A stretch of 64,000 nt of DNA, taken from Macrostomum lignano. Its lineage: Eukaryota. The notes under the pieces are model-generated. The model did not search any database. It was not told the origin of the DNA and was given only the letters and a program-made list of their open reading frames with translations. Of this stretch, positions 27,410-50,727 are shown one piece after another. Each line of letters opens with the position of its first letter. Position 1 is the first letter of the stretch. The DNA lies in contig NIVC01000573.1 of the NCBI GenBank assembly GCA_002269645.1, positions 372,001 through 436,000 of the forward strand, in the 5' to 3' direction. Both the position numbers and the translations under genes were made by a program.

Positions 27410-29251
27410 TAAACAAAGCTGTCTACTTTCTAGCCAGATCCTGAATGCCATATTGCGGAAGGTGTAGTATACGCCGGACGCCGGAAATCCGGCGTACAAA
27501 CGTTTTGTCTGGCGTACATCTAGCGTTTTTCTCGCTGGCAGTTTTCTCGGCTGGCAATTGTCGACTGGCAATTGTCGACTGGCAGTTGTCGGCTGGCAAT
27601 TGTCGACTGGCAGTTGTCGGCTGGCAATTGTCGACTGGCAGTTGTCGACTGGCAATTGTCGACTGGCAGTTGTCGGCTGGCAATTGTCGACTGGCAGTTG
27701 TCGGCTGGCAGTTGTCGGCTGGCAATTGTCGGCTGGCAATTGTCGACTGGCAGTTGTCGACTGGCAATTGTCAACTGGCAGTTGTCGGCTGGCAGTTTTC
27801 CAGCTGGCAGTTTTCTCGGCTGGCAATTGTCAGCTGGCAGTTGTCGGCTGGCAGTTGTCGGCTGGCAATTGTCGGCTGGCAATTGTCGGCTGGCAATTGT
27901 CGGCTGGCAGTTGTCGGCTGGCAGTTGGGGTGGACGTGATGTGATGCACCGCAGTCTCCTAGCTCCCATATGCCACAGAAAAGACAATTGCGCATTGGAG
28001 GGCATCCGCGGTTTGCAACGATCGAGAGATGTGTCTCTGAAAGTAGAAATTTTATCCAAATTTTACTTTTAAAAAATTAAATCGGAGAATGATTTGCTTT
28101 TAATCAACTTTTTTTGCGTTTCAGTTTGTCTGATAAGCTTCAAATTGGAAGTACAAATATGATTACATGTAAATAATTAAGGTTTCAAGTGCTATATGCA
28201 TCGCTAATATACATATACATAATAATATACATAAGCTTATAGGACAAGTTCCACAAGGTCCAAGGAGGATTAATACAAACGTAATTAGACTACATGTAAG
28301 TGTACTTGAAGTACATAAGATACACGCGTATAGCATGTACGGCACAGGAATCCATAGACTGACCAAGACTCGGGCTTAAGGGAGTCGAGAGTCCAAAACA
28401 AAGAATTGTCACCACCTGGTCAGAAACTTAGAGTTTATGTCGTTGTCTTAATCCACAAATATTAGACCCATACATGTAAGGGACGCAGTAGTATAGATTA
28501 AATCGTTTTTTAATTTAAATGTACATATAAATCAGGTAATGACTCTAGCCTGCAACAAAATGAAGACGGGGGACCGGCCGCTTTTACTTGAACCGATTCG
28601 TTATTTTATTTACACGAATCGTGAGCCATAACTGCAGTCGCGAGCGGAAACTCTGCTGCTAAAAAATGAGCAATCGTTATAGCTCTGTACAATATCACTG
28701 CTCAAGCAGCAGCCACCTTAATGCAAATTCTGCAGCTGTCTCACGAGACCAAAATAATTTGCGCGTCTAAACTCAGCTGCGGGTGAGGTGCAGCCCCGGC
28801 CCCTACAATGATGGGGGTCGCAATCGAAACGAGATGAAAAAATAACAACCAGAGACTATGGAGTTCGGACTCTGTGTGAGTTTTCCGTCTTTAACTATTC
28901 TAAACTCGGTTGAGCACATGGTCGCTAGCTGAATTGCTTATGACAGGCCAAGTCATTGTCTATGCATGAAGGCTCTATGGGTGATGAGGGAGAGAGGCTG
29001 ACAATGCGCCGAATAGCTTGAGTACACACAAGAGAACTTGGCTTGACAGCAAGCAGCCTCTCTTCAGAAGCACATGCCGTAGCAGATCTCTTCTCTATTC
29101 ACGTGTCTGAGGCAAGGCTAATTTCTGCCCTGCTCAAATATATCAAATATAAAACCCTTCCAGTTTCTAGCTGAGGACTGAGGCGAGGCCCTTCTTAGAA
29201 CTGCTCTATAAGCTGAAGGCAGATTAACAATTTCAACGCACTCCGCACAAA

Positions 29252-29978
29252 ATGAGCAAACTGGCACTCTACGGTCTGCTGCTTCTGGCGCTGGTAGCAG
29301 CCACACTGGCTGCTCCGGCTTACGACGATGCGGAGAGCTCCGACGGTGAGTCTGAGACATGATGATAGCTCTAACAAATGGAAGCTGAAGCTAGGACCAC
29401 TTTCACGATTCCACATGGAAACGAATTCCAGATCTTCAATGCCGCATGCGACCCGAAAAGCCTCTCTATCCGGCCCTCGGGGTCCTTTTGAAACTTCACA
29501 AAAGCAATCCGGCCCGCTCAAAGTTGCGTCTCTTCTCAGCTCTCCTCTCTCTTCATCGATTTCATTCCTCCTCTCGTCTCGTCTCGTCTCTTCACCTTCC
29601 CTCATCTCTCCTTTCTCCCATGCATCTCTTTTCTCTCCCAGTTTGCCGACCCCTGCCCCAAGAGTAATTTTTCCTCTACAACTGGATTCGAAATTGAATG
29701 TACTTGAAAGTCTCAACCGCGGACACCCGGTTTTGCAGACGAGGACACGGCCGACTGGCTGGATGACCTGATTGACAAGCGCGGCTTTGGAGCCGCCGGT
29801 CGCAAGGGTCACTTCGTCTCTGGGCCGCACAGGTAGGGCCAAAATTATCCCTTCTCCTTGTAAGGGAAATTTAAATTTATATAAATATAAATTTCAACTG
29901 CTGTGTGCCGATTTCAGGAGGTGCCTGCACTACAAGTTCGGCAAGCACGGCCTGTACTGCGCCAAGTATTCCAGCTAG
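29252..29978 (+). CDS. Secreted prepropeptide A, 82 aa; exons 29252-29345, 29739-29832, 29918-29978
   Basis: MSKLALYGLLLLALVAATLA-APAYDDAESSDDEDTADWLDDLID-KR-GFGAAGRKGHFVSGPHRRCLHYKFGKHGLYCAKYSS*. Splice sites G|GTGAGT, TTTTGCAG|, AG|GTAGGG and ATTTCAG| join in frame (phases 1, 2). GC-rich codon usage matches the other genes. ATTAAA at 30149. Confidence 0.85.
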
Positions 29979-30861
29979 AAGTGCTCAGGGCAGCCAGGAA
30001 TAGATATTTTGTTCTTTTATGCTCTCCTATAGCTGCATGCTTAATTTTTCTTATCGATTTTTTTATCTTGGTTTCCTCACTGAAATTCTTTATATAACTT
30101 TCTCTTTTTTAAATAACAATAGACAGCATTCATCTTAGCTGTTCAGATATTAAAATAACAAATACATAAACTAATTTGAAATGTGTATTTATCTGAAGAA
30201 GATAACTACTTCAAAGTTACTTCTTAGTACATGTAGTACACTAGATTTGTTACTATACTAAGTCATGGAGAGATATGCATGGCAAATGATGTTTAAAGCA
30301 AAAAAGCATCAATCCCCGAAAGCCAGCTGTCTAGCCTAAGGCATCAGCATCCCCTGTGAGCTTTTGGCTTCAAAAGCCGCTCTTTACGAGTATGCCATGG
30401 CTTAACCCAAACTCTCCCTTTGATTTACCTTTGGCTTGGCCTACTAATAACTTCCAATTGGCTCTTGGCATCTCAACAACCCCCCACCCCCAACAGCCAC
30501 AGGATTTCAGTAATTCCCCTATGAGCCTTGACAGCTCAGAAATTCTTCACATTTTGGTTGACATGGTGTTTCTTTTTCTTTCTATGAGTTGTCTTCACCT
30601 TAAAAACGCTTAAAAATGAAAAGGCTAATGAAAGACCCATGAAACGATAAAAACAAGCTAACTAACATAACTTTTGTTTTTTGTTTTAAGGTTAGTACAG
30701 GTTTGGTTGGGTTAGGTTTTAGGTTAGGTTTTTCTTAGGTTAGGTTTATGCTCAATAATCTTCGCGTGTTCAGAAATACTTGAGTAAATAGATCAGTTTT
30801 ACTCAAACCTTCTTGATAAATGGGCAGGTTTGAGTTAGCAGTCTGGCATGCAGCCGCGGCT

Positions 30862-33800
30862 TCAGGCGCAGCTCCCGGTGCTCAGCTGCCGGATCGCCAC
30901 GAGTCCCTCCTCGCCGTTGCGCCCGTCGTTCGAGATGCCAACGCAGCCACTGCCGGCGCAGAACGAGCCGCCGCCGCCGCCAGTGTTTTCGTAGGTCGCA
31001 GCCCCCGCTCCGCCGCTGTAGCCACCGCCTCCGCCGCCGGCACCGCAGCTGCTTGTGAAGCCAAAGGCACCGCCGCCGCCACCACCAAAGCCGCCGTCGG
31101 TGCCGGCGTAGCCGCGGCCGCCGACCCATCCTTCGGCGCGGCCGCCGCCGCCCTCGCCGCACCTGTCCTCACGTCGAGTCGAGTTGGCGCCGCTCAGCCA
31201 GCCGGCACCTGGGCCGCCGTAGTAGCCACTGGCAGCAGAGTTCGAAGGCCCGGGCTGGCCGAGAACGCCTCCCGGAGGGTTCTTGTCGGGGTGCGTGCCG
31301 GTACCGTTCTCTCCAGCTTGTCCCGAATAGGCTGCAGGGGCGAAGGGGACAATCATGGTTGCCTGAGTCTTGGCAGAGTGTAAAAATCGAGCCAGAAGGA
31401 CTCAGGCTCAACTCCAGAGGGATGGCTCTCAAAGTACCGTGTGTACTTGTCTGACAATGAGAAAGCTATCGCATTTGTACGCTGGGTGTTGTGGTCTGCG
31501 TGCGTGCTGCAGTCTGCATGTGTGCTGCAGTCTGCATGTTTGCTGCAGTCTGCATGTGTGCTGCAGTCTGCATGTGTGCTGCAGTCTGCATGTGTGCTGC
31601 AGTCTGCATGTGTGCTGCAGTCTGCATGTGTGCTGCAGTCTGCATGTGTGCTACAGTCTGCATGTGTGCTGCAGTCTGCATGTGTGCTGCAGTCTGCATG
31701 TGTGCTACAGTCTGCATGTGTGCTGCAGTCTGCATGTGTGCTGCAGTCTGCATGTTTGCTGCAGTCTGCATGTGTGCTGCAGTCTGCATGTGTGCTGCAG
31801 TCTGCATGTGTGCTGCAGTCTGCATGTGTGCTGCAGTCTGCATGTGTGCTGCAGTCTGCATGTGTGCTGCAGTCTGCATGTTTGCTGCAGTCTGCATGTG
31901 TGCTGCAGTCTGCATGTGTGCTGCAGTCTGCATGTGTGCTGCAGTCTGCATGTTTGCTGCAGTCTGCATGTGTGCTGCAGTCTGCATGTGTGCTGCAGTC
32001 TGCATGTGTGCTGCAGTCTGCATGTGTGCTGCAGTCTGCATGTTTGCTGCAGTCTGCATGTGTGCTGCAGTCTGCATGTGTGCTGCAGTCTGCATGTGTG
32101 CTGCAGTCTGCATGTGTGCTGCAGTCTGCATGTTTGCTGCAGTCTACATGTTTGCTGCAGTCTGCATGTGTGCTGCAGTCTGCATGTTTGCTGCAGTCTG
32201 CATGTTTGCTGCAGTCTGCATGTGTGCTGCAGTCTGCATGTTTGCTGCAGTCTACATGTTTGCTGCAGTCTGCATGTGTGCTGCAGTCTGCATGTGTGCT
32301 GCAGTCTGCATGTGTGCTGCAGTCTGCATGTGTGCTGCAGTCTGCATGTTTGCTGCAGTCTACATGTTTTCTGCAGTCTGCATGTGTGCTGCAGTCTGCA
32401 TGTGTGCTGCAGTCTGCATGTTTGCTGCAGTCTGCATGTGTGCTGCAGTCTGCATGTGTGCTGCAGTCTGCATGTGTGCTGCAGTCTGCATGTGTGCTGC
32501 AGTCTGCATGTGTGCTGCAGTCTGCATGTGTGCTGCAGTCTGCATGTTTGCTGCAGTCTGCATGTGTGCTGCAGTCTGCATGTGTGCTGCAGTCTGCATG
32601 TGTGCTGCAGTCTGCATGTGTGCTGCAGTCTGCATGTTTGCTGCAGTCTGCATGTGTGCTGCAGTCTGCATGTGTGCTGCAGTCTGCATGTGTGCTGTAG
32701 TCTGCATGTGTGCTGCAGTCTGCATGTTTGCTGCAGTCTGCATGTGTGCTGCAGTCTGCATGTGTGCTGCAGTCTGCATGTGTGCTGCAGTCTGCATGTG
32801 TGCTGCAGTCTGCATGTTTGCTGCAGTCTACATGTTTGCTGCAGTCTGCATGTGTGCTGCAGTCTGCACGTGTGCTGCAGCTTACAAAGGAAAGGACAAG
32901 ACGAGCCGCCGCTGCCCCCAGCAGCCAGGTACAGAAACCCGTCGCCGGTGCCGTACACGAAGGAGCCGCCGCCCCCGGCCCCACCGCCATTGGAAACTCC
33001 GGGTTGGCCGCTCTGCCCGACCACAATGGACAGGTGCGTGCCCGCGGCGAGGCTGAAGTTGCCAGCCATCCAGGCGCCTTTGTTCGCTGCTTTGCCCCCT
33101 GAAGAGCCGCCTTTGGCGCCCAACGCCTCGATTCGGTAGCAGCCGGCGACGGTCACCACGGCCTGCTGGACAGAGCCGTTCCGCCCGGTGCCGCTCACTG
33201 CAAGTGAAAATTATCACCATCACCCTTAAGCACTTCTAGTCAGCCGAAGCAGCAAACAATGTTACATGTACTTTTGTTTGATTTAAAGAAGTAAAAATGA
33301 ATTTAGTCGCAGTCTGAATTTTCCCTGCCGCTTCCTCCATCAGCAACCAAAATAGTTTCATGTTGTGGTCGAATACCGACTCACCATTTTACTCACCATT
33401 GAAATTCATTTTAGAGCAATTTTATGATTTCAGAGCCGTTTTACCCACTGGCCACCATTGGACTTGATTTCAGAGCCGTTTTACCCACTGGCCACCATTG
33501 AACTTGATTTCAGAGCCGTTTTACCCACTGGCCACCATTGGTCTTGATTTCAGAGCCGTTTTACCCACTGGCCACCATTGAACTTGATTTCAGAGCCGTT
33601 TTACCCACTGGCCACCACCATTGGACTTGATTTCAGAGCCGTTTTACCCACTGGCCACCATTGAACTTGATTTCAGAGCCGTTTTACCCACTGGCCACCA
33701 CCATTGGACTTGATTTCAGAGCCGTTTTACCCACTGGCCACCATTGAACTTAATTTCAGAGCCGTTTTACCCACTGGCCACCACCATTGGACTTGATTTC

Positions 33801-35031
33801 AGAGCCTGTTTACTCACCATTGGACTTGATTTCAGAGCCTGTTTACTCACCATTGAACTTGATTTCAGAGCCGTTCACCGCCGTAAAAAGCGAGCTCGAG
33901 GCAGCTGAAAATGATGACGATGAAAATTAACTCGCGTCAGTTCCGTAGTATAATGTGTAGACAGAGCGCATATCATTTGCAACACGAAGTCAAAGTCCTG
34001 AGCGCCACAGCTCATACACACGCTCACGCAGGGCCTGAAAGACCTGACTTTCTAATCTTAAGGCATGTCCACTCCCTGTGCCTTGTGGGTTGGCCCTCAT
34101 GGCTGTGACCATCGAGCTGCTGCTCTGCCCCCTCACACACCCTCAAGCTGCTCTCCACATTCAGAAATCGTTCTCAATGGTTACATTTTTTATCATGTAA
34201 CGCAATAAAACCTGAGATTTAAGCCTGAGCGTCTATAAAATTTACAAAATCTCACTTGGCTCGACAGCCATTCGCAGCTGCTCAATCCTTTCTCCAAAAT
34301 CTTCTGCCAGCCACAGCTCATCGCCCGGCTCGGCTCCCAGTTGCCTGGTCACGTGACTGCCGGCCGGTCCAGGCGACTGCAGCAGCCGCAGCACCCGGCA
34401 GAGGCTGCGGTTGCCGCTGAGGACGGCGGCGACGCACCCGGACAGCTGGCTGCAGCGATGGGCGCAGTAAATGCGCGACATGTTGAGCTCTGAGAAGCTG
34501 AGCAGCTCGCTGCTGCTTGAGTTGTCCAGCTGGACTGGCTTGGAGAGTTTGAACAGCCGCTCTGGGGCTTCCGCTGCCAGCAGCTGGCTTGCGGACTCGA
34601 CCAGGAGAATAAAAAGCGGCACTGGCGGCGGTAGAGCAGAGTGAATTGATGAGCTCGTTGCCAAGGCAGTCAGCAGGCACTCAGCAGGTAGTCAGCAGGC
34701 AGTCAGCAGGCAGTCAGCAGGCAGTCAGCAGGTAGACAGCAGGCAGTCAGCAGGCAGTAAGCAGGCACTCAGCAGGTACTCAGCAGGCAGTCAGCAGGCA
34801 GTCAGCAGGCAGTCAGCAGGCAGTCAGCAGGCAGTCAGCAGGCACTCAGCAGGTACTCAGCAGGCAGTCAGCAGGCACTCAGCAGGCAGTCAGCAGGCAG
34901 TCAGCAGGCAGTCAGCAGGCAGTCAGCAGGCACTCAGCAGGTACTCAGCAGGCAGTCAGCAGGCACTCAGCATGTAAAGACAGACAAGTTAGGCACATAA
35001 GCAGCATTTGCTTACCGGCTAGCCAGAACAT
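30862..35031 (-). CDS. Secreted protein with PAN/Apple-like domain plus ALK/LTK-type glycine-rich domain, 387 aa; exons 35031-35016, 34621-34256, 33197-32886, 31331-30862
   Basis: Signal peptide MFWLA|VPLFILLVESASQLLA. PAN-like Cys pattern CAHRCSQLSGC...LCRVL. Gly-rich domain motifs GCYRIEALGAKGG, LSIVVGQSG, GGGGSFV, LAAGGSGG, GGFGGGGG, GGGGGYSGG and GGGGSF. All introns are phase 1 GT-AG and the frame stays open. Confidence 0.82.
31495..32880. repeat. 18-bp minisatellite (GCTGCAGTCTGCATGTGT), about 77 copies, intron 3 of the PAN/Gly-rich gene
   Basis: Tandem periodicity; begins immediately after the GTAAG donor on the - strand. Confidence 0.97.
33425..33870. repeat. 40/43-bp minisatellite (GATTTCAGAGCCGTTTTACCCACTGGCCACCATTGGACTT), intron 2 of the PAN/Gly-rich gene
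   Basis: About 11 tandem units, some with an extra CAC. Confidence 0.93.
34665..34970. repeat. 11-bp minisatellite (GCAGTCAGCAG), intron 1 of the PAN/Gly-rich gene
   Basis: Tandem periodicity. Confidence 0.93.
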
Positions 35032-35520
35032 TCCGACATGAATTCCAGTCCTTAATCAGCTTAGATTCCCAGAGGCTTTCAGTCTCAAAAATTCGCTGGC
35101 TTCAGCTCAGACCCGCAGGTATTTTATGTATTCATTTCTATCCAGAAGTTGCCATGGCAACAATCACAAACAGCCAAACTCTATGTAAAGATGAATGGGG
35201 AAAGCTATCGTGGAAAATCCAGCAGAAATCGATGATTTGATCAACGCTTTTTCCCCCGAGTCCTCAACATCAAGGACGCCGACCCGCGGCTTGTTCAGCC
35301 CAGGCTATCTTCTTCAAGCCATCTTTAAGCGCTTGGTGAACGCTTTGCTGCCCCCATGGCGCTCCTCTGCTATCTGATGCCGCTTGCTAGACAGAGGAAA
35401 CCCATGGGTATTTATAGTTATTTCATTGTTTCGCTTTTTCATGAGGCCAATCTGCTCAAAACGGTTTAAATTATACATTTTAGCAAAAAAACATCGTCTA
35501 TTTTTAACAAAATAGCGTTA

Positions 35521-38500
35521 GTGACTTGTTACAGTCCTATTACTGCATGGTTAGTGACTTGTTACAGTCCTATTACTGCATGGTTAGTGACTTGTTACAG
35601 TCCTATTACTGCATGGTTAGTGACTTGTTACAGTCCTATTACTGCATGGTTAGTGACTTGTTACAGTCCTATTACTGCATGGTTTAGTGACTTGTTACAG
35701 TCCTATTACTGCATGGTTAGTGACTTGTTACAGTCCTATTACTGCATGGTTAGTGACTTGTTACAGTCCTATTACTGCATGGTTAGTGACTTGTTACAGT
35801 CCTATTACTGCATGGTTAGTGACTTGTTACAGTCCTATTACTGCATGGTTTAGTGACTTGTTACAGTCCTATTACTGCATGGTTTAGTGACTTGTTACAG
35901 TCCTATTACTGCATGGTTTAGTGACTTGTTACAGTCCTATTACTGCATGGTTTAGTGACTTGTTACAGTCCTATTACTGCATGGTTTAGTGACTTGTTAC
36001 AGTCCTATTACTGCATGGTTTAGTGACTTGTTACAGTCCTATTACTGCATGGTTTAGTGACTTGTTACAGTCCTATTACTGCATGGTTTAGTGACTTGTT
36101 ACAGTCCTATTACTGCATGGTTTAGTGACTTGTTACAGTCCTATTACTGCATGGTTTAGTGACTTGTTACAGTCCTATTACTGCATGGTTTAGTGACTTG
36201 TTACAGTCCTATTACTGCATGGTTTAGTGACTTGTTACAGTCCTATTACTGCATGGTTTAGTGACTTGTTACAGTCCTATTACTGCATGGTTAGTGACTT
36301 GTTACAGTCCTATTACTGCATGGTTAGTGACTTGTTACAGTCCTATTACTGCATGGTTAGTGACTTGTTACAGTCCTATTACTGCATGGTTAGTGACTTG
36401 TTACAGTCCTATTACTGCATGGTTAGTGACTTGTTACAGTCCTATTACTGCATGGTTAGTGACTTGTTACAGTCCTATTACTGCATGGTTAGTGACTTGT
36501 TACAGTCCTATTACTGCATGGTTAGTGACTTGTTACAGTCCTATTACTGCATGGTTAGTGACTTGTTACAGTCCTATTACTGCATGGTTAGTGACTTGTT
36601 ACAGTCCTATTACTGCATGGTTAGTGACTTGTTACAGTCCTATTACTGCATGGTTAGTGACTTGTTACAGTCCTATTACTGCATGGTTAGTGACTTGTTA
36701 CAGTCCTATTACTGCATGGTTAGTGACTTGTTACAGTCCTATTACTGCATGGTTAGTGACTTGTTACAGTCCTATTACTGCATGGTTAGTGACTTGTTAC
36801 AGTCCTATTACTGCATGGTTAGTGACTTGTTACAGTCCTATTACTGCATGGTTAGTGACTTGTTACAGTCCTATTACTGCATGGTTAGTACTTGTTACAG
36901 TCCTATTACTGCATGGTTAGTACTTGTTACAGTCCTATTACTGCATGGTTAGTGACTTGTTACAGTCCTATTACTGCATGGTTAGTGACTTGTTACAGTC
37001 CTATTACTGCATGGTTAGTGACTTGTTACAGTCCTATTACTGCATGGTTAGTGACTTGTTACAGTCCTATTACTGCATGGTTAGTGACTTGTTACAGTCC
37101 TATTACTGCATGGTTAGTGACTTGTTACAGTCCTATTACTGCATGGTTAGTGACTTGTTACAGTCCTATTACTGCATGGTTAGTGACTTGTTACAGTCCT
37201 ATTACTGCATGGTTAGTGACTTGTTACAGTCCTATTACTGCATGGTTAGTGACTTGTTACAGTCCTATTACTGCATGGTTAGTGACTTGTTACAGTCCTA
37301 TTACTGCATGGTTAGTGACTTGTTACAGTCCTATTACTGCATGGTTAGTGACTTGTTACAGTCCTATTACTGCATGGTTAGTGACTTGTTACAGTCCTAT
37401 TACTGCATGGTTAGTGACTTGTTACAGTCCTATTACTGCATGGTTAGTGACTTGTTACAGTCCTATTACTGCATGGTTAGTGACTTGTTACAGTCCTATT
37501 ACTGCATGGTTAGTGACTTGTTACAGTCCTATTACTGCATGGTTAGTGACTTGTTACAGTCCTATTACTGCATGGTTAGTGACTTGTTACAGTCCTATTA
37601 CTGCATGGTTAGTGACTTGTTACAGTCCTATTACTGCATGGTTAGTGACTTGTTACAGTCCTATTACTGCATGGTTAGTGACTTGTTACAGTCCTATTAC
37701 TGCATGGTTAGTGACTTGTTACAGTCCTATTACTGCATGGTTAGTGACTTGTTACAGTCCTATTACTGCATGGTTTAGTGACTTGTTACAGTCCTATTAC
37801 TGCATGGTTTAGTGACTTGTTACAGTCCTATTACTGCATGGTTTAGTGACTTGTTACAGTCCTATTACTGCATGGTTTAGTGACTTGTTACAGTCCTATT
37901 ACTGCATGGTTTAGTGACTTGTTACAGTCCTATTACTGCATGGTTTAGTGACTTGTTACAGTCCTATTACTGCATGGTTTAGTGACTTGTTACAGTCCTA
38001 TTACTGCATGGTTTAGTGACTTGTTACAGTCCTATTACTGCATGGTTTAGTGACTTGTTACAGTCCTATTACTGCATGGTTTAGTGACTTGTTACAGTCC
38101 TATTACTGCATGGTTTAGTGACTTGTTACAGTCCTATTACTGCATGGTTTAGTGACTTGTTACAGTCCTATTACTGCATGGTTTAGTGACTTGTTACAGT
38201 CCTATTACTGCATGGTTAGTGACTTGTTACAGTCCTATTACTGCATGGTTAGTGACTTGTTACAGTCCTATTACTGCATGGTTAGTGACTTGTTACAGTC
38301 CTATTACTGCATGGTTAGTGACTTGTTACAGTCCTATTACTGCATGGTTAGTGACTTGTTACAGTCCTATTACTGCATGGTTAGTGACTTGTTACAGTCC
38401 TATTACTGCATGGTTAGTGACTTGTTACAGTCCTATTACTGCATGGTTAGTGACTTGTTACAGTCCTATTACTGCATGGTTAGTGACTTGTTACAGTCCT

Positions 38501-41500
38501 ATTACTGCATGGTTAGTGACTTGTTACAGTCCTATTACTGCATGGTTAGTGACTTGTTACAGTCCTATTACTGCATGGTTAGTGACTTGTTACAGTCCTA
38601 TTACTGCATGGTTAGTGACTTGTTACAGTCCTATTACTGCATGGTTAGTGACTTGTTACAGTCCTATTACTGCATGGTTAGTGACTTGTTACAGTCCTAT
38701 TACTGCATGGTTAGTGACTTGTTACAGTCCTATTACTGCATGGTTAGTGACTTGTTACAGTCCTATTACTGCATGGTTAGTGACTTGTTACAGTCCTATT
38801 ACTGCATGGTTAGTGACTTGTTACAGTCCTATTACTGCATGGTTAGTGACTTGTTACAGTCCTATTACTGCATGGTTAGTGACTTGTTACAGTCCTATTA
38901 CTGCATGGTTAGTGACTTGTTACAGTCCTATTACTGCATGGTTAGTGACTTGTTACAGTCCTATTACTGCATGGTTAGTGACTTGTTACAGTCCTATTAC
39001 TGCATGGTTAGTGACTTGTTACAGTCCTATTACTGCATGGTTAGTGACTTGTTACAGTCCTATTACTGCATGGTTAGTGACTTGTTACAGTCCTATTACT
39101 GCATGGTTAGTGACTTGTTACAGTCCTATTACTGCATGGTTAGTGACTTGTTACAGTCCTATTACTGCATGGTTAGTGACTTGTTACAGTCCTATTACTG
39201 CATGGTTAGTGACTTGTTACAGTCCTATTACTGCATGGTTAGTGACTTGTTACAGTCCTATTACTGCATGGTTAGTGACTTGTTACAGTCCTATTACTGC
39301 ATGGTTAGTGACTTGTTACAGTCCTATTACTGCATGGTTAGTGACTTGTTACAGTCCTATTACTGCATGGTTAGTGACTTGTTACAGTCCTATTACTGCA
39401 TGGTTAGTGACTTGTTACAGTCCTATTACTGCATGGTTAGTGACTTGTTACAGTCCTATTACTGCATGGTTAGTGACTTGTTACAGTCCTATTACTGCAT
39501 GGTTAGTGACTTGTTACAGTCCTATTACTGCATGGTTAGTGACTTGTTACAGTCCTATTACTGCATGGTTAGTGACTTGTTACAGTCCTATTACTGCATG
39601 GTTAGTGACTTGTTACAGTCCTATTACTGCATGGTTAGTGACTTGTTACAGTCCTATTACTGCATGGTTAGTGACTTGTTACAGTCCTATTACTGCATGG
39701 TTAGTGACTTGTTACAGTCCTATTACTGCATGGTTAGTGACTTGTTACAGTCCTATTACTGCATGGTTTAGTGACTTGTTACAGTCCTATTACTGCATGG
39801 TTAGTGACTTGTTACAGTCCTATTACTGCATGGTTTAGTGACTTGTTACAGTCCTATTACTGCATGGTTTAGTGACTTGTTACAGTCCTATTACTGCATG
39901 GTTAGTGACTTGTTACAGTCCTATTACTGCATGGTTAGTGACTTGTTACAGTCCTATTACTGCATGGTTAGTGACTTGTTACAGTCCTATTACTGCATGG
40001 TTAGTGACTTGTTACAGTCCTATTACTGCATGGTTAGTGACTTGTTACAGTCCTATTACTGCATGGTTAGTGACTTGTTACAGTCCTATTACTGCATGGT
40101 TAGTGACTTGTTACAGTCCTATTACTGCATGGTTAGTGACTTGTTACAGTCCTATTACTGCATGGTTAGTGACTTGTTACAGTCCTATTACTGCATGGTT
40201 AGTGACTTGTTACAGTCCTATTACTGCATGGTTAGTGACTTGTTACAGTCCTATTACTGCATGGTTAGTGACTTGTTACAGTCCTATTACTGCATGGTTA
40301 GTGACTTGTTACAGTCCTATTACTGCATGGTTAGTGACTTGTTACAGTCCTATTACTGCATGGTTAGTGACTTGTTACAGTCCTATTACTGCATGGTTAG
40401 TGACTTGTTACAGTCCTATTACTGCATGGTTAGTGACTTGTTACAGTCCTATTACTGCATGGTTAGTGACTTGTTACAGTCCTATTACTGCATGGTTAGT
40501 GACTTGTTACAGTCCTATTACTGCATGGTTAGTGACTTGTTACAGTCCTATTACTGCATGGTTAGTGACTTGTTACAGTCCTATTACTGCATGGTTAGTG
40601 ACTTGTTACAGTCCTATTACTGCATGGTTAGTGACTTGTTACAGTCCTATTACTGCATGGTTAGTGACTTGTTACAGTCCTATTACTGCATGGTTAGTGA
40701 CTTGTTACAGTCCTATTACTGCATGGTTAGTGACTTGTTACAGTCCTATTACTGCATGGTTAGTGACTTGTTACAGTCCTATTACTGCATGGTTAGTGAC
40801 TTGTTACAGTCCTATTACTGCATGGTTAGTGACTTGTTACAGTCCTATTACTGCATGGTTAGTGACTTGTTACAGTCCTATTACTGCATGGTTAGTGACT
40901 TGTTACAGTCCTATTACTGCATGGTTAGTGACTTGTTACAGTCCTATTACTGCATGGTTAGTGACTTGTTACAGTCCTATTACTGCATGGTTAGTGACTT
41001 GTTACAGTCCTATTACTGCATGGTTAGTGACTTGTTACAGTCCTATTACTGCATGGTTAGTGACTTGTTACAGTCCTATTACTGCATGGTTAGTGACTTG
41101 TTACAGTCCTATTACTGCATGGTTAGTGACTTGTTACAGTCCTATTACTGCATGGTTAGTGACTTGTTACAGTCCTATTACTGCATGGTTAGTGACTTGT
41201 TACAGTCCTATTACTGCATGGTTAGTGACTTGTTACAGTCCTATTACTGCATGGTTAGTGACTTGTTACAGTCCTATTACTGCATGGTTAGTGACTTGTT
41301 ACAGTCCTATTACTGCATGGTTAGTGACTTGTTACAGTCCTATTACTGCATGGTTAGTGACTTGTTACAGTCCTATTACTGCATGGTTAGTGACTTGTTA
41401 CAGTCCTATTACTGCATGGTTAGTGACTTGTTACAGTCCTATTACTGCATGGTTAGTGGCTTGTTACAGTCCTATTACTGCATGGTTAGTGGCTTGTTAC

Positions 41501-42773
41501 AGTCCTATTACTGCATGGTTAGTGGCTTGTTACAGTCCTATTACTGCATGGTTAGTGACTTGTTACAGTCCTATTACTGCATGGTTAGTGACTTGTTACA
41601 GTCCTATTACTGCATGGTTAGTGACTTGTTACAGTCCTATTACTGCATGGTTAGTGACTTGTTACAGTCCTATTACTGCATGGTTAGTGACTTGTTACAG
41701 TCCTATTACTGCATGGTTAGTGACTTGTTACAGTCCTATTACTGCATGGTTAGTGACTTGTTACAGTCCTATTACTGCATGGTTAGTGACTTGTTACAGT
41801 CCTATTACTGCATGGTTAGTGACTTGTTACAGTCCTATTACTGCATGGTTAGTGACTTGTTACAGTCCTATTACTGCATGGTTAGTGACTTGTTACAGTC
41901 CTATTACTGCATGGTTAGTGACTTGTTACAGTCCTATTACTGCATGGTTAGTGACTTGTTACAGTCCTATTACTGCATGGTTAGTGACTTGTTACAGTCC
42001 TATTACTGCATGGTTAGTGACTTGTTACAGTCCTATTACTGCATGGTTAGTGACTTGTTACAGTCCTATTACTGCATGGTTAGTGACTTGTTACAGTCCT
42101 ATTACTGCATGGTTAGTGACTTGTTACAGTCCTATTACTGCATGGTTAGTGACTTGTTACAGTCCTATTACTGCATGGTTAGTGACTTGTTACAGTCCTA
42201 TTACTGCATGGTTAGTGACTTGTTACAGTCCTATTACTGCATGGTTAGTGACTTGTTACAGTCCTATTACTGCATGGTTAGTGACTTGTTACAGTCCTAT
42301 TACTGCATGGTTAGTGACTTGTTACAGTCCTATTACTGCATGGTTAGTGACTTGTTACAGTCCTATTACTGCATGGTTAGTGACTTGTTACAGTCCTATT
42401 ACTGCATGGTTAGTGACTTGTTACAGTCCTATTACTGCATGGTTAGTGACTTGTTACAGTCCTATTACTGCATGGTTAGTGACTTGTTACAGTCCTATTA
42501 CTGCATGGTTAGTGACTTGTTACAGTCCTATTACTGCATGGTTAGTGACTTGTTACAGTCCTATTACTGCATGGTTAGTGACTTGTTACAGTCCTATTAC
42601 TGCATGGTTAGTGGCTTGTTACAGTCCTATTACTGCATGGTTAGTGACTTGTTACAGTCCTATTACTGCATGGTTAGTGACTTGTTACAGTCCTATTACT
42701 GCATGGTTAGTGACTTGTTACAGTCCTATTACTGCATGGTTAGTGTCTTGTTACAGTCCTATTACTGCATGGT
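35521..42773. repeat. Homogeneous 33-bp satellite (GTGACTTGTTACAGTCCTATTACTGCATGGTTA), about 220 copies, 7.25 kb
   Basis: Near-identical head-to-tail units with no spacers. Rare 34-bp (+T), 32-bp (-G) and A>G variants. Confidence 0.99.
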
Positions 42774-42854
42774 CGCACTAAAAAAAATTTCGGACAGGAT
42801 ATTGTTACACAAAAACTGCTGCATATGCTTGAACGCTTGTACATGTGTTGTATA

Positions 42855-42860
42855 TTTATT
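42855..42860 (-). terminator. Poly(A) signal AATAAA of prepropeptide B gene
   Basis: TTTATT on + strand, about 75 nt downstream of the TAA at 42935. Confidence 0.6.
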
Positions 42861-42934
42861 GAAGCTTGAATCATTTCAGAACACAGTCAGCAGCTCCTGT
42901 CAATAAAAGTTCAACTGCACTAGTGATAGTTGGG

Positions 42935-44508
42935 TTAGTTGTTGAAGTAGGAAACGCAGACCAGTTTGCGGCCGGTGAACCTGTACTTGCGGCAGCGTCT
43001 GCGGGAACGATATCGGATGTTGATGCTGGTCAGGTTTTCACATTCACGATCGAGCGTATTCATTACTCCGTACTCATGAAGGGAATTTGAACAGGGTCGG
43101 AACAGCTCAGAGGTAACCACATTCATTTGGGGGGCTTGTGTGCACAACAGTTGGCCAGAAGTTTGTCCTGAGATTCGATCATATCTATGAGGTCCAACCC
43201 CAATTAGGCACAATCTGCCTGACGATTATAGAAAGTCAGGGGCCTGTGTGAGCGCGTGTGTCTGCGTGCAGTATTGTCGCGCTTGTATGTGTTCAGGAGT
43301 CAAGAGGGGAATTGGGCAGAATTGCCTCAGAGTTGGTTGCTTGTTTGACGATATCGCCGAAGTTTTTTTGCAAGGGTGCCAACAACACAACCCGAATATT
43401 GTTATTAGAGAAATTGTTCAGGCACCAAGGCTCACTGGCTCATACATTCACGTTAGATGCAAAGGTGCGTAGGTAATTGACAATTTAAAATGTAGTGAAT
43501 TCGCAGGTGAAAGGTCACGGCTAACCTGCGCGACAGCTTCTTCCTGTAACTGCCGGTGCCGGAGAAACCGCCGAATCGCGATCGAAATTTCGGGACGCTG
43601 GGCGCTGCGGTGGCCGGCGTCGTCGACGTCGCAGTCTCCGCCGCCGTAGGCGCCGGAGCGTCCAGATGCAAGTGCTCATCGAGATCGTCTTCATCGTCGT
43701 GACGATGATGCTGATGATGCAAATGATTCATATCCGGCAGGTGGTGGACATCTTCCTGCACAGCGAAGGACTCCATGATGTCCATCTCGGCCTCATCTGG
43801 GAAAGGGCGGTTCAGTTTGGCAATTGCATGCTTCATCAGGCTGACTATTCAACATAAGAATTGAAGTATGCGGAGCCCCAAAATCTGACGAGGTGAGCCC
43901 AAATTACAGGAAATTCTGTAGGGCCAAATGGAGCAGCACGTGTAGAAGTACTGCCAACAGTTTGACCTTCAGACACAGACTTGTGACGGCACTACAAGTC
44001 CGTTGGAGTCAAAAAGCGATTAACATGACACTAACCTTCGTCTTTGGCGTGCGCGCCTTTCCTGATCGAGGTTACATGTAAATCTGGCGATAGCCATCCA
44101 CTGCTGGCTTTTTGTTTCAGGGTCATACTGAGAAACCACATGATTCGTCACCTAAGTCATGACCCGTTCCAAGAAGTCGTGGTCGTCAGGCGTCAGGGAC
44201 CACCACGTTCGGGGGTATCAAAGAATTTCGTCAGTGCTTCAAGGCATGGCAGGACGGAAATTCAGCGTTGCATTGACTGCAGGGGTGACGAGTGATTGCT
44301 TGCTTTGAAGAGTTCAAAGCGGAGTGACTTTCTTAAGACCTCACAGCCGAGACTAAAGGCACAGTCCCGATACCTCATGTCGCACCGATCGTATTAGCAC
44401 ATGAAACTTACACGTCGCCTCCTTAGCAGCGGAATAATCGGATACAATAATCAGCATCCCGGTCACCATAGCAACAAAGGCAAAATCGAAGAACTTCAAG
44501 GCAGCCAT
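42935..44508 (-). CDS. Secreted prepropeptide B, 159 aa; exons 44508-44412, 43844-43526, 42998-42935
   Basis: Hydrophobic leader MAALKFFDFAFVAMVTGMLIIVSDYSA (accATG). The His/Asp-rich and then Thr/Ala/Pro-rich pro-region is followed by ...RSR-FGGFSGTGSYRKKLSRRRCRKYRFTGRKLVCVSYFNN*. Splice sites T|GTAAGT, GAATAG|, AG|GTTAGC and CCCGCAG| join in frame (phases 1, 2). Confidence 0.82.
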
Positions 44509-45011
44509 GGTTGAACCGATCGAGAGAGCAGCTGCGTCAAAAAATTGTTCGCTTAACAAATTCGATTCCAAGTTGTTGTTATACTAATTGTTACACCGAG
44601 TAGTAAATTATAAGCCAACCTGTGTCTCGCTGTCTTGACTGAGTTGGCCTTTCCGATAGTAAATTAGATCAAACTCAGCAACACTAAGTCAGTCTAGTCT
44701 AGGTTTCACAATTTGCACTGCATTGGTGCTCGGCTGCTTGGCATGACAAACTTCTAGCTTCCCTGCTGCCCCGGAACTCCCTATACAAGAAGACAGGCGC
44801 TGAATTGTACATGCAATAAAGGAGCAAAACAAAGTACTGGGTGGACCAGTGAGATGCAAGTTAATTTGCACTTTTATTGGCGTAACATAATTTACACGTT
44901 CGGTATATTTTACATAAATCAGAATATGCACTTACACTTTGCCAACATTTGCAACTGCCCAATATTTAATGGCAGTAAGCGTCAGGCTGTGAATGCGATT
45001 TCAATGTGAAT

Positions 45012-45680
45012 TGCGATTCTGTCAGGGCGATTCTGTCAAGGGCGATTTTGTCAAGGGCGATTTTGTCAAAGGCGATTTTGTAGGGCAATTCTGTCAAAAG
45101 CGATTTCGTAGGGTGATTATGTAAGGCGATTTTGTAGGGCGATTCCGTAGGGCTGCTTTGTCAACGGCGATTCTGTAAAGGGCGATGCTGTCAAGGGCGA
45201 TTCTGTAAATGGCGATGCTGTCAAGGGCGATTCTGTAGGGCGATTCTGTCAAAGGCGATTCTGTCAAGGGCGATTCGGTCAAAGGCGATTCTGTCAAGGG
45301 CGATTCTGTAGGGCCATTCGGTCAAGGGCGATTCTGTCAAGGGCGATTCTGTCAAGGGCGATTCGGTCAAGGGCGATTCTGTCAAGGGCGATTCTGTCAA
45401 GGGCGATTCTGTCAAGTGCGATTCTGTCAACGATTCTGTCAAGTGCGATTCTGTCAAGGGCGATTCTGTCAAGTGCGATTCTGTCAAGGGCGATTCTGTC
45501 AAGGGCGATTCTGTCAAGTGCGATTCTGTCAAGGGCGATTCTGTCAAGGGCGATTCTGTCAAGGGCGATTCTGTCAAGGGCGATTCTGTCAAGGGTGATT
45601 CTGTCAAGGGCGATTCTGTAGGGGATTCCGTAGAACTGCTTTGTCAAGGGCGATTCTGCTAAGGGAAAATCGGAGACGCC
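45012..45680. repeat. 15-bp tandem array (GGGCGATTCTGTCAA), probably a solitary arm of a foldback-type element
   Basis: About 40 units ending in a TIR-like cap (reverse complement GGCGTCTCCGATTTTCCC). No inverted partner was seen nearby. Confidence 0.8.

Positions 45681-45789: not shown

Positions 45790-50727
<4,938 letters not shown>

What the first reader, a model, noticed from the sequence alone, without database searches (positions are those of the whole stretch)
29252..44508. Unrecognised paralogous family of secreted cationic single-disulfide peptides (genes A and B)
Seen in sequence: two genes on opposite strands, 13 kb apart, share a three-exon architecture with identical intron phases (1, then 2). 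In both, the second intron splits an Arg codon (AG|N) two residues before the first Cys. The last exons align: A = RRCLHYKFGKHGLYCAKYSS*, B = RRCRKYRFTGRKLVCVSYFNN*. This gives RRC-x2-Y-[KR]-F-x4-L-x-C-x2-Y with C-x11-C spacing. Both also have a Gly/Phe start to the putative mature region (GFG..., FGGF...). Established knowledge: signal peptide + anionic pro-piece + cationic mature peptide is the classic antimicrobial precursor layout, and single-disulfide beta-hairpin AMPs exist (thanatin, arenicin, bactenecin). I do not recognise this motif as any named family. Inference: a divergent, possibly undescribed defence-peptide family; neuropeptide or secretory-granule peptide roles are alternatives.
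Basis: partly seen in the sequence, partly recalled or inferred. Interest (0 to 1): 0.92.

Follow-up and report, generated by a model that had tools for sequence, protein, structure and literature searches.

The report
Orphan flatworm cysteine-loop peptide gene pair
Two neighbouring genes of the flatworm Macrostomum lignano encode small secreted precursors that end in a related, strongly basic peptide closed by one disulfide bond; the pair is real, already annotated as hypothetical proteins, matches no named peptide family, and its function (signalling peptide or antimicrobial peptide) is untested.

Summary
The window is Macrostomum lignano DNA. Gene A (+, 29252-29978, 82 aa) and gene B (-, 44508-42935, 143 aa) each have three exons, GT..AG introns of phase 1 then 2, and a second intron that splits an Arg codon two residues before the first Cys. 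Both end in RRC-x2-Y-[KR]-F-x4-L-x-C-x2-Y. Both models equal GenBank proteins (PAA80608.1, PAA80609.1) from an annotation built only from RNA-seq, so spliced transcripts exist. Two other genomic copies keep the A/B/DEAD-helicase order. Homology of A and B is well supported.

No relative was found outside M. lignano in Pfam, PDB, an exhaustive HMMER scan of 1.84 billion proteins, or the literature. Elevenin, allatostatin-C, somatostatin, luqin-precursor, NPY/NPF and opioid membership each fail a defining feature.

The AMP reading is not tested and is not favoured. Only the C-terminal peptide is conserved between the paralogues; signal and pro-regions are unrelated. That pattern is typical of receptor ligands and is the reverse of what I recall for AMP families. 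I lean to a processed signalling peptide (about 0.4) over an AMP (about 0.25). This is an ordinary lineage-restricted orphan peptide family of modest interest.

The parts
29148..29153 (+). TATA-like box (TATAAA) of gene A, 104 nt upstream of the ATG
   Evidence: Pattern scan. It is conserved in the two other genomic copies. Promoter function is inferred.
29252..29345 (+). Gene A exon 1: Met, signal peptide MSKLALYGLLLLALVAATLA and the start of the acidic spacer. It ends in phase 1 with donor gtgagt.
   Evidence: The product is identical to PAA80608.1 / BOX15_Mlig024363g1.
29739..29832 (+). Gene A exon 2: acidic spacer, the KR site and GFGAAGRKGHFVSGPH. It ends with AG of the split Arg codon (phase 2).
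29918..29978 (+). Gene A exon 3: (R)RCLHYKFGKHGLYCAKYSS and the stop codon. The Cys codons are at 29922-29924 and 29958-29960.
   Evidence: AlphaFold2 places strands 63-70 and 72-79 around G71, which puts C65 opposite C77 (pLDDT about 70).
30149..30154 (+). Candidate poly(A) signal ATTAAA of gene A, 170 nt after the stop codon
   Evidence: It lies in a block conserved in the other copies. Function is inferred.
44607..44612 (-). TATA-like box (TATAAT) of gene B, also 104 nt upstream of its ATG
   Evidence: It is conserved in locus L001. Function is inferred.
44412..44508 (-). Gene B exon 1: Met and the signal peptide MAALKFFDFAFVAMVTGMLIIVSDYSAA. It ends in phase 1 with donor gtaagt.
   Evidence: The product is contained in PAA80609.1 / BOX15_Mlig011470g2 at 100% identity. 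UniProt relatives are named 'Secreted protein'.
43526..43796 (-). Gene B exon 2: an Asp/Glu/His-rich spacer, an Ala/Thr/Pro-rich linker, the KFRSR site and FGGFSGTGSYRKKLSR. It ends with AG of the split Arg codon (phase 2).
43526..43604 (-). Short form of exon 2 that uses an internal acceptor (accgcag|CG, AG at 43606-43605). It skips the acidic/His-rich spacer, keeps the reading frame and gives a 79-aa precursor.
   Evidence: The UniProt model A0A1I8G410 (P0003) reads KEAT-SPSVPKFRSR. 97+79+64 nt = 240 nt = 79 codons plus stop. The site was read from the sequence. This is the prediction of another annotation and has not been checked against reads.
42935..42998 (-). Gene B exon 3: (R)RCRKYRFTGRKLVCVSYFNN and the stop codon. 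The first Cys codon is at 42994-42992.
   Evidence: AlphaFold2 predicts a hairpin over CRKYRF / LVCVSY with pLDDT 80-85.
42855..42860 (-). Poly(A) signal AATAAA of gene B, 74 nt after the stop codon
   Evidence: It is conserved in L001 and L002.

Best explanation
A and B are an old, local (tail-to-tail) duplicate pair of prepropeptide genes of Macrostomum lignano. As far as can be detected, they are restricted to that lineage.

Proposed mechanism:
- The signal peptide directs the precursor into the secretory pathway.
- The acidic spacer neutralises the basic C-terminal part during transport.
- Prohormone-convertase-type cleavage occurs at KR (A) or RSR (B), and very probably also at the RR/RRR that abuts the first Cys.
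- This releases an 18-19-residue C-terminal peptide: CLHYKFGKHGLYCAKYSS (A) or CRKYRFTGRKLVCVSYFNN (B).
- That peptide folds as a beta-hairpin closed by the Cys-x11-Cys disulfide.

The only part conserved between the paralogues is this loop (Y, [KR], F, L, Y and the spacing). I therefore think the loop binds a specific partner, and that the peptides are signalling ligands (neuropeptide- or hormone-like) and not membrane-active antimicrobials.

Shown: gene structures, paralogy, transcription (through the RNA-seq-only annotation), retention in three genomic copies, and the absence of any detectable known family.
Inferred: signal-peptide cleavage, convertase processing, disulfide formation, the hairpin and the ligand role.
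For: Gene models and paralogy:
- The gene models have canonical splice sites and shared intron phases.
- The products are identical to GenBank proteins PAA80608.1 and PAA80609.1.
- The Mlig_3_7 GenBank annotation was made only from RNA-seq and transcriptome assemblies (StringTie/TACO/TBONE/TransDecoder; PMC5730564).
- Similarity between A and B is confined to the C-terminal block (E = 4e-4). The inner-residue shuffle gives p = 0.007. The Arg codon is split at the same position in both genes.

Retention in other copies:
- Two further loci (NIVC01000709.1 and NIVC01002845.1) keep the order A, B, DEAD helicase. Their ORFs and splice sites are intact and the only CDS indel is in frame.
- Inside the two Cys loops these copies differ only by synonymous changes: 2 in A and 1 in B.

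Precursor layout:
- Spacer charge is -11 (A) and -15 (B). C-terminal charge is +7 (A) and +11 (B).
- Basic sites flank the peptides.
- The size and layout match peptidomics-validated planarian 'secreted peptide prohormones' such as the 71-aa spp-12, which also ends in a non-amidated C-terminal peptide (PMC2953531).

Structure:
- AlphaFold2 predicts a hairpin over the loop in both proteins.
Against: - No expression pattern, peptidomic, receptor or activity data could be reached. Gene identifiers were absent from the supplements searched, and several of those files were truncated when stored.
- None of the planarian prohormones in PMC2953531 contains a [KR][KR]C motif, so there is no flatworm neuropeptide precedent.
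- Most flatworm neuropeptides are amidated; these are not.
- The loops contain RK pairs that a convertase might cut.
- The very high charge and the anionic propiece fit host-defence peptides equally well.
- The three genomic copies are only 2-3% diverged, with exons about as diverged as introns. Selection on the peptide is therefore not demonstrated.
- The structure models have modest confidence (mean pLDDT 61 and 67). In the B model the strand register does not obviously place the two Cys opposite each other.
Confidence: 0.42

Rival explanations
1. This is the first reader's view: host-defence (antimicrobial) peptides. The anionic propiece masks a cationic beta-hairpin peptide that is released into mucus, the gut or wounds and kills microbes by membrane or envelope attack, like thanatin, arenicin or bactenecin.
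For: - Net charge is +7 and +11 with no acidic residue in the mature part, pI is 10.2 and 11.4, and the propieces are anionic.
- A disulfide-braced hairpin is predicted.
- The family is lineage-restricted and a local duplicate, as many AMP families are.
- Few flatworm AMPs are known, so an undescribed family would not be surprising (PMC10414684 and PMC11546468, listed).
Against: - Conservation is the reverse of the usual AMP pattern (my own knowledge of cathelicidins, amphibian skin peptides and BRICHOS-AMPs). Here the signal and pro-regions share nothing and only specific loop residues are kept.
- RR/RRR directly before the first Cys would remove much of the charge. The loop peptides alone carry only +3 and +5.
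- There is no clear amphipathic segregation in the hairpin (by inspection).
- No immune-induction or activity data are available.
- No BRICHOS or other AMP precursor domain is present.
Confidence: 0.25
2. The peptides are another kind of exported gland product: a seminal-fluid or prostate peptide, a pharyngeal, epidermal or rhabdite secretion, a toxin or deterrent, or a small Gly/Tyr/Lys/His-rich adhesive or eggshell-type component.
For: - M. lignano has many lineage-specific small secreted proteins (my own knowledge of the seminal-fluid and adhesion literature).
- TATA-box promoters and short genes suit highly expressed gland transcripts.
- The Gly, Tyr, Lys/Arg and His-rich composition of the basic part is loosely reminiscent of DOPA-type adhesive or eggshell proteins.
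- There is no homologue outside the species.
Against: - The gene identifiers were not found in the reproduction-related gene tables of PMC7336406. Those files are truncated, so this is weak evidence.
- The peptides are far smaller than known flatworm adhesive or eggshell proteins.
- Conserved basic cleavage sites and a conserved loop point to a processed bioactive peptide rather than bulk material.
Confidence: 0.22
3. A and B are unrelated small genes and the C-terminal resemblance is chance. Alternatively, one or both are non-functional transcripts whose ORFs are not translated.
For: - The shared block is only about 20 residues with 8 identities.
- There is no nucleotide similarity between the genes.
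- There is no homologue in any other species to show conservation.
- Exon and intron divergence between the genomic copies is similar.
Against: - The intron phases are identical and the same Arg codon is split two residues before the first Cys.
- The genes are adjacent in three genomic copies.
- E = 4e-4 for the pairwise comparison and shuffle p = 0.007 beyond the frame.
- Both have signal peptides, TATA boxes and poly(A) signals.
- All copies keep intact ORFs, and the one CDS indel is in frame.
Confidence: 0.06

Closest known systems
Somatostatin / allatostatin-C / urotensin-II / MCH-type cyclic neuropeptide precursors
   Same: The precursor is small. The bioactive peptide is the last element, is preceded directly by a di- or tribasic site, is not amidated and is closed by one disulfide. 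An aromatic-basic-aromatic core (Y-[KR]-F) lies inside the ring.
   Different: - Ring size is 11 residues, against 6 for AstC (for example Aplysia SHYSSMCMFNVVACY, PMC10175484). From memory, somatostatin has 10, MCH 8 and UII 4.
- There is no C-[YF]-F-N-P or F-W-K-T core.
- There is a 5-6-residue tail after the second Cys.
- No sequence match was found by HMMER.
- The receptor is unknown.
Single-disulfide beta-hairpin antimicrobial peptides (thanatin, arenicin, bactenecin)
   Same: The peptide is cationic, has one disulfide across a predicted hairpin, and has an anionic pro-region.
   Different: - Ring sizes differ (from memory: thanatin 6, bactenecin 7, arenicin 16).
- There is no sequence relation and no BRICHOS or other shared precursor domain.
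- The conservation pattern is the opposite of typical AMP families.
- Activity is untested.
Elevenin (L11 peptide)
   Same: It is a protostome neuropeptide with one essential disulfide. The start of the ring is loosely alike: C-T-R-F-V-F in elevenin against C-R-K-Y-R-F in B.
   Different: - Every known elevenin has exactly 8 residues between the Cys.
- Elevenin lies directly after the signal peptide.
- Elevenin keeps D before Cys1, a Pro in the ring and C-R-G after it (PMC10175484). None of these is present here.
C-terminal two-cysteine motif of luqin / RYamide precursors
   Same: There is a pair of Cys about 10 residues apart at the C-terminal end of a small neuropeptide precursor.
   Different: - Luqin precursors are defined by an N-terminal ...RF/RY/RW-amide peptide next to the signal peptide and a C-x10-C spacing (PMC7041311).
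- A and B have no such peptide and have C-x11-C spacing.
- Flatworm luqin genes are separate, known genes.
Nociceptin/orphanin FQ (opioid-family peptide)
   Same: In B, the peptide that follows the RSR site begins FGGFSGTGSYRKKLS. Nociceptin is FGGFTGARKSARKLANQ (peptide sequence from memory). Identity is 7/17, similarity 11/17, and E = 7e-4 for the single comparison.
   Different: - Gene A has GFGAAG instead of FGGF.
- There is no opioid-precursor N-terminal Cys-rich domain (no Pfam hit).
- Opioid precursors are known only from vertebrates (my own knowledge).
- The comparison was made after the fact on a low-complexity Gly/basic stretch, so the match is most likely chance.
Planarian 'secreted peptide prohormones' (Smed-spp genes)
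   Same: These are 70-100-aa precursors with a signal peptide and peptides bounded by KR/KK/RR. Some end in a non-amidated peptide at the C-terminus, for example spp-12 (PMC2953531).
   Different: No sequence similarity. None of the planarian prohormone sequences contains [KR][KR]C.

Membership tests
Elevenin | Two Cys separated by exactly 8 residues | tested here: not met
   A and B have 11 residues between the Cys. The criterion is from PMC10175484.
Elevenin | Peptide directly follows the signal peptide; conserved D-C...P-x-C-R-G | tested here: not met
   The loop is at the extreme C-terminus. Cys1 is preceded by RR. There is no Pro in the ring. Cys2 is followed by AKY in A and VSY in B.
Allatostatin-C | C-terminal peptide with C-x6-C and a C-[YFM]-F-N-P/V-x-x-C core | tested here: not met
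   The C-terminal position after basic residues is met. The ring size (11) and the core are not (Aplysia AstC sequence).
Somatostatin / cortistatin | C-x10-C ring with an F-W-K-T core (from memory) | tested here: not met
   The ring has 11 residues, contains no Trp and has a Y-[KR]-F core.
Luqin / RYamide precursor | N-terminal luqin peptide ending R-[FYW]-amide next to the signal peptide | tested here: not met
   In both genes the signal peptide is followed by an acidic spacer with no R[FYW]G[KR] site. The criterion is from PMC7041311.
Luqin / RYamide precursor | C-terminal C-x10-C | tested here: not met
   The spacing is C-x11-C in both genes.
NPY / NPF | 36-39-residue peptide ending R-x-R-[FY]-amide, with a phase-2 intron in the Arg codon just before the last residue | tested here: not met
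   A phase-2 intron does split an Arg codon, but it lies 2 residues before Cys1 and 18-20 residues from the end. There is no C-terminal RxR[FY]G. The criterion is from PMC2953531.
Opioid / nociceptin precursors | [YF]GGF message at the N-terminus of a peptide released at basic sites | tested here: inconclusive
   It is present in B (RSR|FGGF) and absent in A (KR|GFGA).
Opioid / nociceptin precursors | Conserved Cys-rich N-terminal precursor domain (Pfam Opiods_neuropep, from memory) | tested here: not met
   There is no Pfam hit at E <= 10 other than a noise match to Anophelin. The pro-regions contain no Cys.
Beta-hairpin AMPs (functional class) | Cationic peptide with a disulfide-stabilised hairpin | tested here: inconclusive
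   Charge is +7 and +11. The hairpin is predicted at pLDDT of about 70-85. Foldseek found no PDB match.
Beta-hairpin AMPs (functional class) | Microbicidal activity; immune, epithelial or infection-induced expression | not testable with these tools
   This needs MIC assays and expression data.
Arenicin-type AMPs | BRICHOS-domain precursor (from memory) | tested here: not met
   No Pfam domain was found in either protein.
Neuropeptide / peptide-hormone prohormone (functional class) | Signal peptide, basic cleavage sites around a conserved peptide, small precursor | tested here: met
   The layout is comparable to validated planarian spp prohormones. UniProt names the B relatives 'Secreted protein'.
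Neuropeptide / peptide-hormone prohormone (functional class) | Expression in neurons or endocrine cells with PC2/CPE; a cognate receptor | not testable with these tools
   No expression table containing Mlig024363, Mlig024524 or Mlig011470 could be reached.

The most novel reading that the evidence does not exclude
The pair represents a previously undescribed flatworm signalling-peptide family whose precursor carries two ligands. The first is a C-terminal disulfide-ring peptide in the same precursor position as somatostatin and allatostatin-C. The second, in B, is an upstream nociceptin-like FGGF(S/T)G...RK.L peptide released at a basic site. Allatostatin-C, somatostatin and opioid receptors belong to one GPCR clade (my own knowledge). 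Such a precursor would therefore hint at a protostome relative of the opioid/somatostatin ligand group, which is so far thought to have no invertebrate opioid-type member. A more modest novel reading is simply a new flatworm neuropeptide family or a new hairpin AMP family. That reading is much more likely (about 0.6 combined) but less remarkable (interest about 0.4-0.5).
Probability: 0.03. Interest if true: 0.85.

Novelty: new member of a known kind. Interest (0 to 1): 0.3.

Why it matters
If the peptides are ligands, they add a non-amidated, disulfide-ring neuropeptide or hormone type to the flatworm repertoire, which so far consists almost entirely of linear amidated peptides. They would also offer a small, tractable pair for receptor deorphanisation in a transgenic flatworm model. 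If they are AMPs, they would be among the few host-defence peptides known from free-living flatworms. In either case this is a lineage-restricted orphan family of the common kind 'small secreted processed peptide'. It does not change any general picture, and the genes are already in the public annotation.

Tried and rejected
Searches that found nothing:
- Pfam scan of both precursors gave only a noise hit (Anophelin, E = 0.06, below cut-off).
- Word-indexed search of 5.8 billion proteins with A and with B returned only M. lignano copies and isoforms. The same search with the C-terminal alignment found no candidate. Two earlier attempts failed on parameter limits.
- Exhaustive HMMER search of 1.84 billion representatives with the C-terminal profile returned only the three M. 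lignano proteins. A roughly 20-residue motif cannot reach significance in a library of that size, so distant peptide relatives are not excluded.
- PDB sequence searches with the profile and with both mature peptides gave nothing below E = 3. Foldseek of the B hairpin model against PDB gave no match.
- Literature searches for the peptide strings gave no paper. A search for the identifier Mlig024524 gave no paper.
- The gene identifiers Mlig024524 and Mlig011470 were searched in the supplements of four papers, without occurrence. Mlig024363, the identifier of window gene A, was searched only in the supplements of PMC7336406, also without occurrence. My first searches used the homeologue's identifier (Mlig024524) before one search showed that window gene A is Mlig024363.g1. 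Several of these files are truncated.
- The planarian prohormone catalogue contains no [KR][KR]C, and spp-12 and spp-16 are unrelated.
- A six-frame motif scan of the window found no third family member.
- A DNA comparison of the two genes and their promoters found no similarity beyond 8-9-mers.

Family assignments rejected: elevenin, AstC, somatostatin, luqin precursor, NPY/NPF and opioid precursor (see the membership tests).

Other ideas considered:
- Selection could not be assessed from the three genomic copies because they are only 2-3% diverged.
- YIRFamide-like or RFamide products from Y-K-F-G-K (A) and Y-R-F-T-G-R-K (B) were considered. This is not a standard RF-G-basic site in either gene, so I kept it only as a note.


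Full report
**Origin of the window.** The predicted product of gene A is identical to GenBank PAA80608.1 (BOX15_Mlig024363g1). That of gene B is contained at 100% identity in PAA80609.1 (BOX15_Mlig011470g2). Both lie on a 531,927-bp contig of the Macrostomum lignano Mlig_3_7 assembly. The window is therefore nuclear DNA of a free-living flatworm. It is rich in minisatellites.

**Check of the observation.**
- Gene A (+) has exons 29252-29345, 29739-29832 and 29918-29978 (94/94/61 nt).
- Gene B (-) has exons 44508-44412, 43796-43526 and 42998-42935 (97/271/64 nt).
- All four introns are GT..AG with good polypyrimidine/AG acceptors. Their phases are 1 then 2 in both genes.
- The second intron splits AG|G (A) or AG|A (B). 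This is the first Arg of the R-R-C that opens the last exon.
- The A product (82 aa) is MSKLALYGLLLLALVAATLA-APAYDDAESSDDEDTADWLDDLID-KR-GFGAAGRKGHFVSGPH-RR-CLHYKFGKHGLYCAKYSS.
- The B product (143 aa) is a signal peptide, an Asp/Glu/His-rich and then Ala/Thr/Pro-rich spacer, KFRSR, FGGFSGTGSY-RKK-LS-RRR and CRKYRFTGRKLVCVSYFNN.
- Spacer net charge is -11 (A) and -15 (B). The basic C-terminal part carries +7 with 4 His (A) and +11 (B).
- Each gene has a TATA-like box 104 nt upstream of its ATG. Each has a poly(A) signal after the stop codon: ATTAAA at +170 in A and AATAAA at +74 in B.

**Are the genes expressed and spliced this way?** I could not map reads. However, the GenBank annotation of Mlig_3_7 was produced solely from RNA-seq and transcriptome assemblies (STAR, StringTie, TACO, TBONE and TransDecoder; PMC5730564). 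Its proteins are exactly the ones obtained by hand-splicing. An independent annotation in UniProt gives 145-155-aa 'Secreted protein' models of B. It also gives a 79-aa form (A0A1I8G410) that uses an internal acceptor at 43606-43605, skips the acidic/His-rich spacer and stays in frame. That isoform keeps only the signal peptide and the basic C-terminal part. This fits the idea that the C-terminal part is the functional product.

**Are A and B homologous?**
- BLASTP aligns only the last 19 residues: 8 identical, E = 4e-4 for one comparison.
- With R-R-C and the second Cys held fixed, shuffling the other 16 positions of B equals the observed score in 0.7% of 100,000 trials.
- Independently, both genes have the same exon number, the same phases and the same split codon at the same distance from Cys1.
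- They are neighbours, arranged tail to tail.
- There is no nucleotide similarity, so the duplication is old.
- I regard the paralogy as established (about 0.9).
- The window holds no third member. The exhaustive protein search found only A-type and B-type proteins.

**Other genomic copies.** Two other contigs (L001 = NIVC01000709.1 and L002 = NIVC01002845.1) carry the same arrangement: A, then B on the opposite strand, then a DEAD-box helicase. This agrees with the known redundancy of the DV1 genome.
- In those copies A and B are only about 5 kb apart. The 13-kb spacing in the window is due mostly to a 7.3-kb, 33-bp satellite (35517-42773; 219 copies, 99% matches) and to smaller arrays.
- The copies are 97-98% identical to the window.
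- In A there are 6 substitutions in 249 nt of CDS. Two are non-synonymous: one in the signal peptide and one in the spacer.
- In B there are 9 substitutions and an in-frame 6-nt insertion (HH). Two amino-acid changes are in the spacer and two are in the basic part (R to K, and N to K in the tail).
- Inside the Cys rings only synonymous changes are seen.
- Exons and introns are about equally diverged, so this comparison is too shallow to demonstrate selection. It shows only that all copies are intact.

**Search for relatives and known families.**
- Pfam gave nothing.
- The word-indexed searches gave only M. lignano proteins.
- The exhaustive HMMER search of 1.84 billion representatives gave only the three M. 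lignano entries.
- PDB sequence searches gave nothing below E = 3.
- Foldseek gave nothing.
- No paper in the library prints the peptides or the one gene identifier searched.
- A motif of about 20 residues cannot reach significance in such libraries. Transcriptomes of other Macrostomum species and other flatworms were not searchable with these tools. 'Restricted to M. lignano' therefore means 'no detectable relative', not proven absence.

**Named families considered.**
- Elevenin requires C-x8-C, a position right after the signal peptide, and D-C...P-x-C-R-G (PMC10175484). All three fail.
- Allatostatin-C has C-x6-C and somatostatin has C-x10-C with FWKT (from memory). The ring size and the core both fail, although the precursor position (last element, after basic residues, not amidated) is the same.
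- Luqin-type precursors have a C-terminal C-x10-C but are defined by an N-terminal RF/RY/RW-amide peptide (PMC7041311). That peptide is absent here and the spacing is 11.
- NPY/NPF genes also have a phase-2 intron inside an Arg codon (PMC2953531). There it sits just before the amidated C-terminal residue, and A and B have no RxR[FY]-amide end.
- None of the peptidomics-validated planarian prohormones contains [KR][KR]C.
- The family is therefore unnamed. It belongs only to the general kind 'small secreted precursor of a processed, disulfide-closed peptide'.

**Structure.**
- AlphaFold2 on the A homeologue (single sequence, mean pLDDT 61) gives the signal helix, a short helix in the spacer and three strands: 55-59, 63-70 and 72-79. 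The hairpin turns at G71, so C65 faces C77. pLDDT there is about 66-74.
- For the 42-residue basic part of B (three-sequence alignment, mean pLDDT 67) it gives a hairpin, CRKYRF / LVCVSY, at pLDDT 80-85. The DSSP strand limits imply a register in which the two Cys are not directly opposite.
- A disulfide-braced hairpin is therefore plausible but only modestly supported.

**What it most likely does.** The steps I infer are these.
1. The signal peptide is removed. In A this is after ATLA. In B it is probably after YSAA.
2. Transit occurs with the acidic spacer masking the basic part.
3. Cleavage occurs at KR (A) or RSR (B), and at the RR/RRR that abuts Cys1.
4. The loop is oxidised.

Because basic sites lie directly before Cys1 in both paralogues, and the intron position there is also conserved, I think the 18-19-residue ring peptide is the unit under constraint.

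Between the paralogues the signal peptides and spacers are unrelated. Within the ring, five non-Cys residue positions (Y, [KR], F, L, Y) and the spacing are kept. From my own knowledge, AMP families usually show the opposite pattern: conserved prepro-regions and hypervariable mature peptides. Ligands keep the mature peptide. The precursor size and layout also match validated planarian 'secreted peptide prohormones'.

I therefore place a signalling-peptide role first (about 0.4), a host-defence role second (about 0.25) and other gland secretions third (about 0.2). None of these is tested. Expression tables containing these genes could not be reached.

**Two further features worth recording.**
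- First, the peptide after RSR in B, FGGFSGTGSYRKKLS, resembles nociceptin (FGGFTGARKSARKLANQ, from memory). Identity is 7/17 and E = 7e-4 for a single post-hoc comparison. A has GFGAAG instead, and no opioid-precursor domain is present. I treat the match as probably chance, but it defines the most novel reading that is not excluded.
- Second, both loops carry Gly followed by basic residue(s) at the predicted turn (F-G-K in A, T-G-R-K in B). In principle this could be an internal cleavage/amidation site that yields a two-chain, disulfide-linked peptide. In addition, GFGAAG-RK in A could give GFGAA-amide. Only peptidomics can decide.

**Verdict.** The genes are already public as hypothetical or secreted proteins. 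No named family fits. The AMP assignment is one of several untested possibilities and not the best supported one. This is an ordinary, lineage-restricted orphan peptide family.

Noticed in passing
window 35517-42773: A 33-bp satellite (GTTAGTGACTTGTTACAGTCCTATTACTGCATG) of 219 copies at 99% identity fills most of the gap between genes A and B. In the two other genomic copies, A and B are only about 5 kb apart, so the array has expanded here or collapsed there.
   Followed up: partly
window 31494-32880, 33425-33875, 34664-34972, 45013-45619: Further minisatellites lie around the gene pair: 18 bp x 77 copies, 40 bp x 11, 11 bp x 28 and 15 bp x 42. They create long spurious ORFs in several frames.
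   Followed up: no
window 43555-43584 (-), residues 107-116 of B (through residue 121 with the adjoining basic stretch): FGGFSGTGSY(RKKLS) follows a basic site and resembles vertebrate nociceptin FGGFTGARKSARKLANQ: 7/17 identical, E = 7e-4 for a single post-hoc comparison. Gene A has GFGAAG at the aligned place. The match is probably chance.
   Followed up: partly
window 43604-43606 (-): An internal acceptor in B exon 2 is used by UniProt model A0A1I8G410. It removes the acidic/His-rich spacer in frame and gives a 79-aa precursor. It has not been checked against reads.
   Followed up: partly
window 29148-29153 (+) and 44607-44612 (-): Both genes have a TATA-like box exactly 104 nt upstream of the start codon, although the promoters share no other similarity.
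   Followed up: no
window 29937-29945 (+) and 42971-42979 (-): Both Cys loops have Gly followed by basic residue(s) at the predicted hairpin turn (F-G-K in A, T-G-R-K in B). This is a possible internal cleavage/amidation site that would give a two-chain disulfide-linked peptide. Separately, GFGAAG-RK in A (29790-29813) could yield GFGAA-amide.
   Followed up: no
window 26227-27345 (+): There is an uninterrupted 372-aa ORF with Mos1/mariner transposase domains (HTH_48, HTH_32, Transposase_1, DDE_3), about 2 kb upstream of gene A. It is followed by a 14-bp minisatellite at 27547-27927.
   Followed up: partly
window 1650-3260 (-): A single-exon 536-aa ORF is a full-length ferroportin (Pfam FPN1, E = 9e-123, profile positions 5-430 of 430).
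   Followed up: partly
window about 46700-49200 (-): This is a DEAD-box helicase gene (DEAD and Helicase_C domains). It is the conserved neighbour of B in all three genomic copies. Minisatellites lie inside or next to it: 21 bp x 25 copies at 46123-46680, 30 bp x 33 at 48187-49170 and 32 bp x 20 at 49711-50359.
   Followed up: partly
window 61428-62642 (+): A 404-aa ORF is extremely rich in Gln and Ala (poly-Q runs) and has no Pfam domain. It is possibly an exon of a Q-rich transcription regulator.
   Followed up: no
window 43700-43760 (-), B spacer: The spacer contains a His-rich acidic stretch, HHLPDMNHLHHQHHRHDDEDDLDEHLHLD. The other genomic copies have two extra His from an in-frame 6-nt insertion. 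It may bind metal, or it may simply be a variable low-complexity spacer.
   Followed up: no
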